DNA of 64,000 nucleotides from NCBI RefSeq assembly GCF_001194135.2, contig NC_068996.1:34993035-35057034 (forward strand), written 5' to 3'. Shown here in pieces: positions 126-61,014 of this stretch; position 1 is the first letter of the stretch; every line of letters begins with the position of its first letter. The notes beneath the pieces were generated by a model, which did no database searches, had not been told where the DNA came from, and saw only the letters and a list, made by a program, of their open reading frames with translations. This DNA comes from Octopus bimaculoides (Eukaryota). The position numbers were made by a program, and so were the translations under genes.

Positions 126-181
126 CTTTTCTTCTACCTGCTGTTTATATTTTTCTTTATCATTTTGCCATTTCTCTGCCT
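126..181 (-). CDS. MTUS1/MTUS2-like: Internal coding exon (56 nt, phase 1 to 0), same gene; gene continues beyond window start
   Basis: Acceptor ctaattttacAG|AG and donor AAG|GTATAG. Encodes (Q)AEKWQNDKEKYKQQVEEK, which recalls MTUS1 EEAEKYKMQLQEQ. Confidence 0.82.
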
Positions 182-1027
182 CTGTAAAATTAGATTTTAA
201 GAGATAATTAAAAACCAAACATATAATTAGTCCTCACTACAAAATACTTAGCATTCCTGTTTTAAAAATAATTTTGTGAATATTAAAAAAAGAGAAAAAA
301 ACCCTAAAAATGCTAACAAATAAAAGGTTTTGATATAGGACCGAACTAATGAGCCAATAATTACATAAACAATTTTTCTTTAGTGAAAAATATCTGAAAT
401 TATCAACTATCCATCAAGGTAGTGAGCCAGAAGAATCAGCAATATGTTCAACAAGATGCTTGGTGATATTCATTCCGGCCCACTGCATTCTGAATTCAAT
501 TCCCACCAAAGTCGACTTCATCTTTCACCGTTTTGGGATTGATAAAATAAATACCTGTCAGTTACTGGGGTTGATGTAATTGACTAGCCTCTCCCTAATT
601 GCTGGCCTTGTTCCAAAATTTGAAACCCTTACTATCTATTTTTTGCCCACATAACTAAGCATTTCGGCAAAAGAGACCAATAGAATAAGTACTAGGCTTA
701 CAAAGAACAAAGCCAGGGGTTGATTTCTTTGACTAACAAAAGAAAAATAAATTCCTTTAAGACGATACTCCAACATGGCCACAGTAAGTAAAAGAAGTAA
801 GTAAGTAAAAGAATAAAAGAAAACTGAACTGTGTTCTTTCCACCCTAACTAAAATTGATGAGTTCAATTCCTCTCTGAATTGAACTTACCAATTTTATAC
901 ATATAAACACACACATCATCACTTAAATGCATTACATGCACAAGCTGGCCAGCCTTTATATGGCTTCCTATTTGTTAGAAATAGATATCAGATGACACTC
1001 AATTGTCTTAAAAAAAGAAACCAGGAC

Positions 1028-1390
1028 ATCATCATCATCATCGTTTAACATCTGCTTTCCATGCTAGCATGGGTTGGACGATTTGACTGAGGACTGGCAA
1101 GCCAGAAGGCTGCACCAGGATCCAATCTGATCTGGAAGAGTTTCTACAGCTGGATGCCCTTCCTAATGCCAACCACTCTGAGAGTGTAGTGGGTGCTTTT
1201 ATGTGCCGCTGGCATGAAGGCCAGTCAGGTGGTACTGGCAATGCCCTCACTCAAAAGGTGTTTTTTTACGTGCCACCTGCACAGGAGCCAGTCCAGCGGC
1301 ACTGACAATGACCTCGCTTGAATGATTTTCTAACGTGCCACCAGCACAAGTGTTAGAAGGCGACGCTGGTAACTATTACACTCAAATGGT
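1028..1390 (-). mobile_element. Ceph-SINE-like element
   Basis: Reverse complement of the same core and tail (catcatcatcgtttaacatctgctttccatgctagc). Confidence 0.8.
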
Positions 1391-57500: not shown

Positions 57501-60500
57501 CCTTGTGTCACTCTAACTTCTACTGTTTATTGATAAACACACATATCTACACTTACATATATGTATGTATTTATGTATGTACGTACATATCAACAAATAT
57601 ACATACATATACAGGCATACAAAGACATCACCAACTTATCTTATACCAAATCATACATAATAGTACTTCCAACCTTACTCTAGTGACACATAGATAACAG
57701 TGGTATATTATAAATCTACCAAATTAGATTATTTTAAGACATAGGAAACAGTAGGAACCAATCTCACTATAGACAATAGTAGGCACTACCAAAATAACAG
57801 AAACCTACGTTACACAAGTATATATTATGGTATTACCAAAATTCCCAAGACATAGATAACAACAGCACTACTAACCTTACTGAGACATAAATAACAGCAG
57901 AATATTATGATATTTATTCTAAGTTTAGATATTTCTTTCTTCACATAAGACCTTAAGCCCTTATGTAAAGTCTTGTTTTAAATTTAGAAATAGATGCTAC
58001 ACAAAAGACCAATGTAATATATGAAAGCTAAGAAACAACTGCAATCTGTTTTTGCAACAACAGCTACAGCCTGTATATAAGGAAGATAGCTAGATATATC
58101 AAGTACCAAAGATGGTTATTAATAGCTTTGGAGAGACAAGTATATAAACTATGAGAGAATTTATATTTATAAACTCTAATATATGAAAGCATTTTTAATC
58201 TGTTGCTACGAATTTGTGTCTTGTAGTTATACTCTAGTACCAATATTTTATTTATTATAGACTTTACCTCACCTTTCTTTTTTAATATTAAATAGAATTT
58301 GGTAAAAATAAATTTCAGAGCTGTACATATCTGGCAAGTGACCTAATCTAATGTCAAAATTTATTTTATCCCTTTAATACATACTAAATGATATATTTTG
58401 AGACCAACTTGTATGAAAGAATTCTTTGACACTTTTTTGAAATATTACAATATTATTCTATATTGTGGTTATTGCCAAGTTCTGATTGATCAGATCTGAG
58501 ACATTCCAACCATGACCCTCATGTTTTTTGTTTTTTTTTACCTAACAGTATGTATATATGGTCCATAAACAAGCAATAAAAAAAGCAAATAAAAAATGAA
58601 AAGAAAAAAAAAAAACCAACATGAGGATGAGGATATTAGTTTGATGCTCAGTGAAAGGAGAGAATTTTTAACATTTCGAGTAAAACTCGACGTCAGAAAG
58701 GAGAAAGGGAAAAGTCCAAAGAAGAAGGAAAATCACCAATGGCCCATGTGTGGTTACTGTCCTGTTCTTTAGTATGTTTTAGTCAAAACCATATCTTCTT
58801 TTACTTATTTCAGTTGTTGGACTGCAGACATGCTGGGGCACTGCCTTGAAGGGTTTTAATCAAACAAATCAGGTCCACTACTTATTTATTAAGTCAAGTG
58901 CTTATTCTATTGGTCTCTTTTTGCTGAAATCCTAAGTTACAGGAACATAGACATATCAACAGTGGTTGTCAGGTGGTGGTGGTGGTGGTGGTGGTGGTCA
59001 AAGAGAAACATATACACACATGGTAGGCTTCCACACTGTTTCTCTCTTCTGAAATTCCCTAACAAATCATTAGTCAGCCTGGAGGCTATAGTAGAACTTG
59101 CCTAAAGTGCTACACACTGGGACTGAAACTGAAACCAATTTAATTGCAAAGTGATCATCTTAACCACCATTCATAACTGTGCCGTGCTTATCTTTTTTTT
59201 TTTTTTCTGTAAGATAACAGTGTGTGATGTCAGGGAAGTTTGGCTGCTATTTCCAGCAAATTGTAAAGCTATACAGGGGCTCTGTTATAGTTTCTTTTCT
59301 CATACTTTGGTACTATTAGTTAGTTATATTTTGGTTCTAGATTATAATTTGATCTCAGTTTTTCAGAGATGTCTGAGAATAAATTAAATTGACTTAATGT
59401 TAAAAAAAAGATTAAAATGCTTCTATTTCAGAGAAGTTTATATTTCAGACAACCCAAAAGACAAATATGGTACTAAGAGTGTGGAAGATTATGAAACTGG
59501 TTCTTAGATACATCACACCTGCTATAATATCAAAGAAAGATAGGTGAATTAGGTAAGAAATTAATGTATTAATAACAAAATATCATTAGAAGTATGCAAA
59601 TGAAGAGATTAAAGGGTTTAACTTATCTCAGTGAAATATGCAAAATATGATAAACTGGCAGTAAATAGCAAGAATCTGCAACTATGGAGGAATCAGTTTT
59701 GATAGGTCTCTAGCAGATGGATTCTTCAAGATTATCGCCCCCATAGGGATTATCATGTTTTGGCCTTCAAATAGTGCCTTTTAAGTTTTCCAATTAAGAA
59801 TATGGTTATATATTCTACTGGCATTTATGGCACTATTCCAGTGAGTTTTATAAAATACTTAAGTTAATTCTGCTATAACTTTGGTAAAGTAACAAACACA
59901 TTCACTGAAAAGTCTATGGAATGCTTTGTGATTTGTAACTTTACTAAAGAACATTTTTTTAACACGATAAGATGTCTCCTGTTTTGATGTTGAAAACACT
60001 AAAATTGGTAAAACAATACTAAATGCTAAAAAAACTAACAACAAAAATAAAATTTCATTAAAAGAAACTAATGAACTATGTGAATCAACATAATTAAGTT
60101 ATCGAAAATATCAAAATGAATAAAGAATTGGCCAAAAATCCACTTAGAAATATTAGAAGAAAGTATTTAAAAAAGTCTACAGTTAGGTATTGGTGCATAA
60201 GTACATAACTGTAGCGATTAAATAAATTGGTATTGAAAAAAAAAAAAATTTTAATATTGTAAAGTGGGTTGTTGCTTTGTAAATGATTCCCCAAGTTTCA
60301 AGAATTTAAAGAGAATAAAGTTATAAATCAAACAAAAATATTTCATTTTGTATTTGGTTTGTAGCACCTGTGTTTATTATTGATATAATGATCCTCCCAT
60401 GATACAAGTAAAATAATTTCAATATCATATTAAACATTGTCTAGAATACCAAACTTTGGTAACCTGAATAGCCGCCCCCACTACAAAAAATCCTGAAGAA

Positions 60501-60848
60501 ATTCATGATGGATGGTGGTCCCTGCTGGTATAAACATGTTTAGTAAAGTTTACTTATTTTGTTAAATTTAGAAGTTGTTGTTCTTGTGGTGGTGGTGATT
60601 AATGAGCTTCTTGATGTTTTGTGTAAAGTCCTTTGCTAACACAAGTTTACCTCGACATGCACAAACATTATTAAATATATACATTCACTAAATCAAAAAT
60701 ATAGTGTCAGTTTATGGAACACACTGGAAGTTAAAATAAATTAAATTTTACAAATTTTCAAATTATTCTACAATGTTTCTACATATGGAAAAAGAAAGGA
60801 AAATCAGGTTTTAGCATAAAAACAATATTTTAGATACATGGAACATAC

Positions 60849-61014
60849 CTACAGAAGAAGTCTTTTTTGGTAAATAACTTCCAACTTTTAAAATTCTGTG
60901 CCCTAAGAGCAGTCTGTAGAGTTTGGTAGAAGCATTCAATAAGGAATAAGCCAACGAAGACATGGCATTGAAGAATAAAGTGGACATGGGTAGAATCCAA
61001 GATATTAAGGACAT
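60849..61014 (-). CDS. MTUS1/MTUS2-like: Candidate alternative first coding exon B (55 aa, phase 1)
   Basis: Encodes MSLISWILPMSTLFFNAMSSLAYSLLNASTKLYRLLLGHRILKVGSYLPKKTSSV followed by consensus donor TAG|GTATGT. Phase 1 fits exon 15595. Sequence is unique (non-repeat). The start codon is uncertain because the frame is open further upstream. Confidence 0.55.

What the first reader, a model, noticed from the sequence alone, without database searches (positions are those of the whole stretch)
126..61014. Multi-promoter MTUS/ATIP-like gene: two distant first exons may put different targeting peptides on one coiled-coil body
Seen: four internal exons splice in frame, and two unique-sequence ORF starts 25 kb and 45 kb upstream of exon 15595 both end at consensus donors in phase 1, the phase that acceptor requires. 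Established: mammalian MTUS1 uses alternative promoters to make isoforms with different N-termini and locations (ATIP1 with a reported mitochondrial targeting peptide, ATIP3 microtubule/EB1-associated, ATIP4 with a predicted membrane segment). Inference: a cephalopod co-orthologue has the same switchable N-terminus design, either ancestrally or convergently. The first exons are too short or too mis-bounded for ORF-based annotation.
Basis: partly seen in the sequence, partly recalled or inferred. Interest (0 to 1): 0.72.

Follow-up and report, generated by a model that had tools for sequence, protein, structure and literature searches.

The report
MTUS-like gene: one real short-isoform start
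The window holds part of a microtubule-associated tumour suppressor (MTUS)-like coiled-coil gene. The nearer of the two proposed start exons is genuine and conserved, while the farther one is no better than a chance reading frame, and this gene layout is already annotated in other molluscs.

Summary
The sequence observation is correct. On the minus strand, four exons (15595-15375, 8478-8397, 4387-4229, 181-126) splice in frame into a 172-aa coiled-coil body. Both proposed first exons end at GT donors in phase 1. The body belongs to the MTUS1/MTUS2/CCDC69 family.

The nearer first exon, E40 (40231-40156, MEKRRRIPRPASWCFIRCIDDMLNQ), is real:
- Two independent transcript contigs from a related species start with MEQKRRHTRPASWYLIRCINDMFGSK, spliced directly onto the same body exon.
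- Synonymous sites are saturated while the peptide is conserved.
- A stop codon lies upstream in frame.
- The exon sits in the window's main non-repeat CpG-rich, promoter-like domain (39.6-41.6 kb).

The farther exon, E60 (61014-60849), has no support. It has no homologue and no CpG signal. About three such ATG-ORF-plus-donor combinations per phase are expected by chance here. Four unbridged assembly gaps separate it from the gene.

No long-isoform exon was found in the window, so whether E40 is an alternative start in this species is inferred from other molluscs. Patella RefSeq isoforms X5 and X6 already show different first exons on the same acceptor. Any targeting role for the peptide is untested.

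Verdict: partly supported, a new member of a known kind, modest interest.

The parts
40156..40231 (-). Coding part of first exon E40: ATG plus 25 codons plus 1 base (MEKRRRIPRPASWCFIRCIDDMLNQ), donor AGG|GTAAGG, phase 1. The 5' UTR extends upstream by an unknown length.
   Evidence: tblastn of transcript product P0003 hits here and only here upstream of the body (E 2.6e-6). It matches 16 of the 23 aligned codons of P0003's first exon. There are 15.5 synonymous differences on 14 synonymous sites against pN 0.19. An in-frame TAA lies 19 codons upstream with no earlier ATG. The donor PWM score of 9.9 is as good as the best body exon.
39600..41600 (.). CpG-rich, promoter-like domain covering E40 and about 1.4 kb upstream of it. 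It includes a TATA-like TATAAAA at about 41047 on the minus strand.
   Evidence: CpG observed/expected is 0.8-2.0 here against a window median of 0.19. The region holds 16-29 CpG per kb against about 1-9 per kb over most of the window. The only other dense bins are GC-rich repeats. A promoter function is inferred, not shown.
15375..15595 (-). Common exon a (DQVDQNKVNK...FDAMSVLVNYLAVE). Its acceptor tttcag|AT is in phase 1 and it leaves in phase 0. This is the junction exon for alternative N-termini.
   Evidence: 65% identical to P0003. Genomic ORF fragments from a relative (P0019) and many other invertebrates show the exon beginning at the same DQN(R/K)NK.
8397..8478 (-). Exon b (LDAFTNFSLKEKFGLMKEELTETKKEL plus 1 base), leaving in phase 1.
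   Evidence: AG/GT flanks. Colinear with P0003 residues 106-132.
4229..4387 (-). Exon c (ENLNDKQK...NEKHMQELSR plus 1 base). The donor GAC|GTAAAT is weak, but it is the only GT in place.
   Evidence: Colinear with P0003 residues 133-196.
126..181 (-). Exon d (QAEKWQNDKEKYKQQVEEK), the least certain of the four. The gene continues past the window's start.
   Evidence: Good acceptor ttttacag|AG and donor AAG|GTATAG. QAEK aligns with P0003 LQAEK. The orthologous transcript continues for about 370 more residues.
60849..61014 (-). It is listed only as unsupported and is most likely a chance ORF.
   Evidence: No similarity to any of the 162 family proteins held, and no hit in a 5.8-billion-protein search. 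CpG o/e is 0.08. Earlier in-frame ATGs exist at 61059 and 61047. Chance expectation is about 3 per phase.

Best explanation
The window carries the middle of an MTUS-family gene on the minus strand. The gene is a co-orthologue of vertebrate MTUS1, MTUS2 and CCDC69.

A promoter-like CpG-rich domain at about 39.6-41.6 kb drives a transcript whose first coding exon is 40231-40156. This exon encodes a 25-residue polybasic peptide, and it splices across a roughly 24.6-kb intron onto the phase-1 acceptor at 15595. The product is a short isoform, 571 aa in the related species. It consists of this short peptide followed by the family's coiled-coil region, and it lacks the long N-terminal part that full-length invertebrate relatives carry (CAP-Gly domain plus a disordered region).

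By analogy with other molluscs, a long isoform probably enters the same acceptor from exons upstream of the window. That would make E40 an internal alternative promoter of the same architectural type as human ATIP1.

The 61014-60849 ORF is a chance open frame with a chance donor.

Shown: the exon structure, family homology, conservation and coding constraint of E40, its direct junction to the body in a relative's mRNA, and the CpG domain.

Inferred: promoter activity, existence of a long isoform in this species, and any localisation role for the peptide. The basic KRRR cluster plus a conserved Cys could suit nuclear or membrane targeting.
For: Exons and frames:
-.

Family:
- phmmer with P0003 finds 129 relatives, including named MTUS1 and MTUS2 proteins.
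- The window body itself hits Ostrea 'MTUS1 homolog' at 7e-16, Lingula at 4e-12, Ptychodera at 4e-11 and Patella at 1.6e-9, all at Z = 1.84e9.
- Pfam MTUS1_CCDC69_CC2 is recorded on orthologue P0163.

E40:
- P0003 and L001 (SRR27666084) and P0163 and L003 (SRR27666087) both read MEQKRRHTRPASWYLIRCINDMFGSK|DQSKVSDQNK. An in-frame stop lies in the 5' UTR.
- The alignment to the window is colinear at 50% identity, E 1e-50.
- tblastn gives a unique hit at 40231.
- dN is far below dS.
- An upstream in-frame stop exists in the window as well.
- CpG o/e peaks over and upstream of E40.
- Long relatives match P0003 only from residue about 27-33, that is, after the first exon.

Same design elsewhere:
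- Patella vulgata X6 reads MASKRSRGIRGFFSRLFK|DQNRNR. X5 has a different N-terminus of about 150 aa on the same junction.

E60 as chance:
-.
Against: - There are no transcript data from the window's own species. The 40156>15595 junction is inferred from a relative that is 50% identical.
- No long-isoform exon was detected anywhere in 15.6-64 kb. 'Alternative' promoter use in this species is therefore not shown.
- The link between the window body and vertebrate MTUS proteins is only transitive. Direct hits to vertebrate MTUS2 were not significant.
- The species of the supporting transcripts is unknown.
- Promoters outside CpG islands exist, so the absence of a CpG signal does not exclude E60.
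- The protein database seems to hold few sequences from relatives close to this window's species: no near-identical protein turned up and only two related transcript contigs were found. The null result for E60 is therefore weak.
Confidence: 0.75

Rival explanations
1. Both E40 and E60 are used as alternative first exons, giving two different N-terminal peptides on one coiled-coil body, with E60 as a hydrophobic, ATIP4-like start.
For: E60 is an open frame of 55-70 aa ending at a usable phase-1 donor, TAG|GTATGT, score 7.7. It is non-repetitive within the window. The peptide is moderately hydrophobic, with a maximum Kyte-Doolittle mean over 19 residues of 1.34.
Against: - No homologue was found among the 162 family proteins held at that point or in the large protein search. 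tblastn of all family proteins finds nothing there.
- CpG o/e is 0.08.
- About 2.4-2.9 equivalent candidates per phase are expected by chance, and three other phase-1 candidates are present.
- The start codon chosen is arbitrary, since in-frame ATGs lie upstream.
- Hydrophobic composition is what a T-rich random frame gives, and 1.34 is below the usual 1.6 threshold for a membrane segment.
- Four unbridged assembly gaps lie between E60 and E40.
Confidence: 0.05
2. E40 is the only, constitutive start of this gene in this lineage. The long CAP-Gly form has been lost or is encoded elsewhere, so there is no switchable N-terminus here.
For: No long-isoform exon was detected in the 48 kb upstream of exon a. 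The only transcripts found for the closest relative are the short form, from two runs. No long protein from that clade appeared among the 129 family hits.
Against: - The long form is present in every other molluscan class sampled. It is also present in brachiopod, echinoderm, hemichordate and amphioxus, and it enters at the same exon.
- The N-terminal regions next to the junction are low-complexity and poorly conserved, so tblastn would easily miss them.
- The window ends 23 kb upstream of E40, and introns in this gene run to 24 kb.
Confidence: 0.17
3. E40 is an internal exon of a longer coding transcript rather than a first coding exon.
For: No 5'-end data exist for this species. Possible AG acceptors exist upstream of the ATG.
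Against: - An in-frame TAA lies 19 codons upstream of the ATG in the window.
- An in-frame TAA lies in the 5' UTR of the relative's mRNA.
- Long relatives do not contain the peptide.
Confidence: 0.03

Closest known systems
Human MTUS1 isoforms ATIP1, ATIP3 and ATIP4 (alternative promoters and first exons on common 3' exons; PMC3566609)
   Same: One gene, with distinct 5' exons joined to shared 3' coiled-coil exons. The short isoform has a brief unique N-terminus and lacks the long N-terminal region. The family homology of the coiled-coil body is the same.
   Different: No sequence similarity was found between the E40 peptide and any vertebrate family protein retrieved here. None of those is a short ATIP1- or ATIP4-type isoform, so that comparison was not made. 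Only one short-isoform start is supported here. Use of a second promoter in this species is not shown. Localisation is unknown, whereas ATIP1 is reported at the mitochondrial outer membrane, Golgi or nucleus, and ATIP4 has a predicted membrane segment (PMC11077360, PMC3566609). From my memory of the human sequence, the common part seems to start at a comparable place (EKSRQKNPRS against DQNRNKTSKS). This is a lead, not a test.
Patella vulgata 'microtubule-associated tumor suppressor candidate 2' isoforms X6 (XP_050415055.2) and X5 (XP_050415053.2)
   Same: X6 has an 18-aa basic first-exon peptide (MASKRSRGIRGFFSRLFK) joined directly to the DQNRNR exon. X5 has a different N-terminus of about 150 aa on the same junction. 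This is the same acceptor and the same design as E40>15595.
   Different: The peptide sequences are not demonstrably homologous, sharing only a basic-then-aromatic character. The Patella isoforms are RefSeq predictions. I could not fetch the locus to compare distances or CpG content.
Logan transcript contigs SRR27666084_232927 (P0003) and SRR27666087_147431 (P0163), species unknown
   Same: These are the orthologous short isoform. The first-exon peptide is homologous, the junction is identical, and the body is colinear at 50% identity.
   Different: They come from a different species. There are extra residues at the junction (GSK|DQSKVS). They are transcripts, so they say nothing about intron size or promoter.
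Vertebrate CCDC69 (short MTUS-family paralogue; PMC11621681)
   Same: A short protein made mostly of the family's coiled coils, with an N-terminal localisation motif and a basic NLS-like cluster near the N-terminus.
   Different: CCDC69 is a separate gene with an N-myristoylated Gly2. The E40 peptide starts Met-Glu, so it has no myristoylation site. The paper states that CCDC69 has no invertebrate homologues, which fits a co-orthologue relationship.

Membership tests
MTUS family (MTUS1/MTUS2/CCDC69) | Sequence homology of the coiled-coil body to recognised MTUS proteins | tested here: met
   The window's 172-aa body, scored with phmmer at Z = 1.84e9, gives Ostrea edulis 'MTUS1 homolog X6' 7e-16, Lingula MTUS1/2 4e-12, Ptychodera MTUS2-like 4e-11, Patella MTUS2 1.6e-9 and Priapulus MTUS2-like 3e-19 (names). 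Vertebrate MTUS2 is reached only through orthologue P0003, at 1.6e-7 to 5e-6.
MTUS family (MTUS1/MTUS2/CCDC69) | Pfam MTUS1_CCDC69_CC2 (PF27558) C-terminal coiled-coil domain | not testable with these tools
   That part of the gene lies beyond the window's start. The orthologous transcript product P0163 carries the precomputed hit. The local Pfam copy lacks the model: it returns no families for P0163 and nothing for the window body.
MTUS family (MTUS1/MTUS2/CCDC69) | Several 5' exons or promoters joined to common 3' exons | tested here: inconclusive
   One short-isoform first exon (E40) is supported by orthologous mRNAs and a CpG-rich domain. No second start was found in the window. Relatives show the design.
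MTUS family (MTUS1/MTUS2/CCDC69) | Microtubule or EB1 association and regulation of kinesin-13 | not testable with these tools
   This is a functional property known from vertebrate members (PMC11621681) and needs experiments.
ATIP1-type short isoform | Unique short N-terminus from an internal promoter, spliced to the first common exon | tested here: met
   The E40 peptide of 25 aa joins the common exon in phase. The same junction is seen in two transcript contigs of a relative, with stops upstream of the ATG.
ATIP1-type short isoform | N-terminus acts as an organelle (mitochondrial) targeting signal | tested here: inconclusive
   The peptide is basic (6 K/R, net +3) with an amphipathic stretch (muH 0.77). 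It also contains Glu2, two Pro and a DD pair. No targeting predictor was available.
ATIP4-type isoform (claimed analogue for E60) | N-terminal stretch hydrophobic enough for a membrane segment, in a real exon | tested here: not met
   The maximum Kyte-Doolittle mean over 19 residues is 1.34, below the usual 1.6. The exon itself has no support.
CCDC69-type short paralogue | N-terminal Met-Gly myristoylation motif | tested here: not met
   The E40 product begins Met-Glu-Lys and the orthologue begins Met-Glu-Gln.

The most novel reading that the evidence does not exclude
The internal promoter that gives a short, CAP-Gly-less isoform entering at the DQN(R/K)NK exon may be homologous between molluscs and the vertebrate short MTUS forms (ATIP1, ATIP4, and CCDC69 as a fixed copy). 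In that reading, a switchable N-terminus on the MTUS coiled-coil body predates the split of protostomes and deuterostomes, and the short polybasic peptide is a conserved localisation signal.
Probability: 0.25. Interest if true: 0.5.

Novelty: new member of a known kind. Interest (0 to 1): 0.3.

Why it matters
The result gives a correct gene-model fix. A 76-nt coding first exon lies 24.6 kb upstream of the next exon, which ORF-based or homology-based annotation would miss. With it comes a short isoform of a microtubule-regulator gene in a lineage where no named family member turned up in my searches.

More broadly, a short isoform entering at the same ancient exon boundary recurs in limpet and in this lineage, and architecturally in human MTUS1. 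This suggests that the long microtubule-tip-binding form and the short coiled-coil-only form are an old functional pair. The claim of two switchable targeting peptides in this window does not hold as stated.

Tried and rejected
- Pfam scan of the 172-aa body: only noise, E above 0.5.
- PDB sequence search: nothing meaningful.
I ran it with orthologue P0003 instead.
- tblastn of 162 family proteins against the window, to find long-isoform exons upstream of exon a: none. Only E40 was hit.
- A search for E40-like or E60-like peptides in the 162 family proteins then retrieved: only P0003 matched E40, and nothing matched E60.
- A chimeric last search (E60 ORF plus P0003) in the 5.8-billion-protein set: nothing matched the E60 part.
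- Alignment of the relative's 5' UTR to the DNA upstream of ATG 40231: too diverged to prove colinearity.
- Literature search for the SRR run numbers, to learn the species: none found. A search for MTUS1 plus octopus found none.
- Fetching the Patella X6 locus to compare architecture: not on record.
- The L002 genomic contig carrying P0001 was fetched, but it was not available to scripts and seems to come from a more distant animal. I did not pursue it.
- Rfam scan of the window: no hits.
- Pfam scan of transposon-like ORFs: no hits.
- I considered and rejected E40 as an internal exon, because of the upstream in-frame stops. I also rejected the idea that a gap disrupts the frame, because all gaps are intronic.
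Full report
**What is in the sequence.**
The window is AT-rich (36% G+C), full of microsatellites, and has seven N runs. On the minus strand I verified four exons with AG/GT borders:
- 15595-15375 (221 nt)
- 8478-8397 (82 nt)
- 4387-4229 (159 nt)
- 181-126 (56 nt)

They join in frame into 172 residues of heptad-rich sequence. 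The first of them is entered in phase 1: the acceptor is tttcag|AT, and the AT completes a GAT codon.

- E40: ATG 40231 to 40156, donor AGG|GTAAGG, 25 codons plus 1 base.
- E60: ATG 61014 to 60849, donor TAG|GTATGT, 55 codons plus 1 base.

Each gives an uninterrupted frame with the body.

**Assembly gaps.**
None of the gaps touches an exon or a splice site. The nearest is more than 3 kb from any exon, and most are flanked by microsatellites or a GC-rich repeat. Frame is therefore not at issue, but order and distance are.

The three gaps between E40 and the last exon are bridged indirectly. All five exons occur in the same order and orientation as in a related species' mRNA. The four gaps between E60 and E40 are bridged by nothing.

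**Is the phase match more than chance?**
No. I scored donors with a simple consensus matrix. I then counted ATG-initiated open frames of at least 20 codons that end at a donor at least as good as E60's, on the gene strand between 15.6 and 64 kb.
- Phases 0, 1 and 2 give 4, 5 and 3 such donors. Phase 1 also contains 63793-63670, 54902-54773 and 33420-33228.
- The opposite strand gives 5, 1 and 1.
- First-order Markov simulations give 2.4-2.9 per phase.
- Even the frame of at least 55 codons plus a phase-1 donor occurs in 27% of simulations.

Any support for either exon must therefore come from elsewhere.

**What the gene is.**
A word-indexed search with exon a found only two partial invertebrate fragments. 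A search with the E40-spliced product found P0003, a 284-aa product of a 939-nt Logan contig from run SRR27666084. It is 50% identical and colinear over 183 residues, E 1e-50.

An exhaustive HMMER search with P0003 gave 129 relatives. The source names, where present, are:
- 'microtubule-associated tumor suppressor 1 homolog' (Ostrea edulis, Biomphalaria)
- 'microtubule-associated tumor suppressor candidate 2' (Patella vulgata, Lingula, Ptychodera, Priapulus, Ixodes, and the vertebrates Pleurodeles, Arapaima and Brachyhypopomus)
- 'CAP-Gly domain-containing protein' for many long forms

The window's own 172 residues reach the named invertebrate MTUS proteins at E-values from 7e-16 to 2e-9, scaled to the size of the whole library. 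They do not reach the vertebrate ones directly.

A second Logan contig is L003, 1881 nt, from run SRR27666087. It carries the same transcript to its natural stop. Its product P0163 has a precomputed Pfam hit to MTUS1_CCDC69_CC2. That region lies beyond the window's start, so it cannot be checked here. The local Pfam copy lacks the model.

**The 40-kb exon is real.**
- P0003 begins MEQKRRHTRPASWYLIRCINDMFGSK and runs straight into DQSKVSDQNKVN. The window gives MEKRRRIPRPASWCFIRCIDDMLNQ followed by DQVDQNKVN.
- The same 5' end is present in L003. There the ATG at nt 100 is in frame with the start the gene caller chose at nt 163. Two independent runs therefore show the junction, and the full short isoform is 571 aa.
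- L001 has an in-frame TAA in its 5' UTR. The window has an in-frame TAA 19 codons above ATG 40231 with no ATG between.
- tblastn of P0003 against the whole window hits 40231-40139 (E 2.6e-6) and nothing else upstream of the body.
- Over the 23 alignable codons there are 15.5 synonymous differences on 14 synonymous sites, which is saturation. Only 0.19 nonsynonymous differences occur per site. That is the signature of a constrained coding sequence.
- The contigs are spliced mRNA. Genomic ORF fragment P0019, 78% identical to P0003, has intron-like sequence on both sides of exactly this exon...FIFIS|DQSKVS ... LANE|VSIIK. These are the same borders as in the window.
- E40 lies in the window's main non-repeat CpG-rich domain. 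The median CpG observed/expected is 0.19. From about 39.6 to 41.6 kb it is 0.8-2.0, with 16-29 CpG per kb against about 1-9 per kb over most of the window. The other dense bins are two GC-rich repeat copies.

This domain covers the exon and the 1.4 kb upstream of it, and it contains a TATAAAA at about 41047. I read it as an unmethylated promoter region, which is inference.

**The 60-kb exon is not supported.**
- It has no similarity to any of the 162 family proteins held at that point.
- It is not hit by tblastn with any of them.
- It found nothing in the last large protein search, which I ran as a chimera of the E60 ORF and P0003.
- CpG observed/expected around it is 0.08.
- The frame stays open for 71 codons above the chosen ATG and holds earlier in-frame ATGs, so the proposed start is arbitrary.
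- Its hydrophobic look is what a T-rich frame yields, and it stays below the usual threshold for a membrane segment.

The database seems to hold few sequences from relatives close to this window's species: no near-identical protein turned up and only two related transcript contigs were found. The negative result is therefore weak. With a chance expectation of about three per phase, I put the probability that E60 is used at about 5%.

**Is E40 an alternative start?**
In long relatives of 1200-2350 aa, the match to P0003 begins at residue 27-33, just after the first exon, and lies in the C-terminal third of those proteins. Many genomic fragments from other invertebrates show an exon starting at DQN(R/K)NK, so this acceptor is an old boundary.

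RefSeq for Patella vulgata lists isoform X6 with an 18-aa basic first exon (MASKRSRGIRGFFSRLFK|DQNRNR). It also lists isoform X5 with a different N-terminus of about 150 aa on the same junction. Ostrea and Lingula also have several N-terminal isoforms.

In humans it is established that ATIP1, ATIP3 and ATIP4 arise from alternative promoters and 5' exons on common 3' exons (PMC3566609).

In this window, however, I found no long-isoform exon in the 48 kb upstream of exon a. Such exons may lie beyond position 64000, may be too diverged to detect, or may not exist in this lineage. I give the last option about 17%.

**How it most likely works.**
A promoter in the CpG-rich domain produces a transcript whose 25-residue N-terminus is followed directly by the coiled-coil region. 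In vertebrate relatives this region mediates microtubule binding and control of kinesin-13 depolymerases (PMC11621681). The short form lacks the CAP-Gly domain and the long disordered region of the full-length invertebrate proteins.

The peptide has a KRRR cluster, two prolines and a short amphipathic stretch, and Cys18 is conserved in both species. It has no myristoylation glycine and no membrane segment. A localisation role (nuclear, membrane-proximal or organellar) is plausible but untested. Reports for human ATIP1 itself disagree, placing it at the mitochondrial outer membrane, Golgi or nucleus (PMC11077360).

**Caveats.**
- The organism of the window and of the supporting transcripts is unknown to me. 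No cephalopod-named protein appeared among the 30 hit clusters whose source names I looked up, so 'cephalopod' is unverified.
- The junction in this species is inferred from a relative.

**Verdict.**
E40 is a genuine, conserved short-isoform start of an MTUS-like gene. E60 is most likely a chance ORF.
- The architecture is a new member of a known kind.

Noticed in passing
window 39600-41600: This is the only CpG-rich stretch of the window that is not a GC-rich repeat. CpG o/e is 0.8-2.0 against a median of 0.19, and G+C is only 28-43%. It lies on E40 and just upstream of it. A TATAAAA at about 41047 (minus strand) is followed about 25 nt later by CCACATT, which fits an initiator consensus.
   Followed up: partly
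related proteins P0004, P0005, P0021, P0137: Full-length invertebrate MTUS-like proteins (Pecten, Gigantopelta, Ostrea, Branchiostoma) carry an N-terminal CAP-Gly domain, with Pfam PF01302 hits from E 1e-21 to 1e-24. By source name, Lymnaea and Patiria do too. The one vertebrate MTUS2 scanned (Pleurodeles) has none. The full-text search that combined the MTUS gene names with CAP-Gly found no paper holding both.
   Followed up: partly
window 11285-11907 and 44468-44804: Two copies of a GC-rich (52-58%) repeat with CpG o/e of about 0.7. It has overlapping open frames on both strands (peptide motifs such as ALATISLENPT and GTGNDLA). Each copy abuts a 10-N gap, so the assembly probably broke inside this element.
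   Followed up: no
window 3486-4030 (+) and 11970-12281 (+): Two intronic ORF remnants share the motif HLFPK(I/M)K(M/I)QL.G..FNT.VKIQ. From memory this resembles the C-terminus of mariner-type transposases, but the Pfam scan gave no hit.
   Followed up: partly
window 42123-42308 (-), about 9820-9950 (-), about 5165-5260 (-), 63593-63793 (-): Short ORF fragments with a recurring motif, FHP(F/L)(R/G)(I/V)(D/Y)K(I/L)(S/K)TS, are scattered through the introns. They look like a dispersed short repeat family. It was not characterised.
   Followed up: no
L003 1-14 and window 40335-40358: The longer transcript contig of the relative begins with a run of 14 A about 85 nt upstream of its ATG. The window has a run of about 24 A some 105 nt upstream of ATG 40231. 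It is not clear whether this is a conserved 5'-UTR feature or just where the assembler stopped. The UTR alignment was inconclusive.
   Followed up: partly
L001 931-939: Contig L001 ends in ...SRDRKSVV-stop, where L003 continues ...FRNRARMCEE. The first contig may therefore carry a retained intron or an alternative 3' end after the codon for ...CECEE.
   Followed up: no
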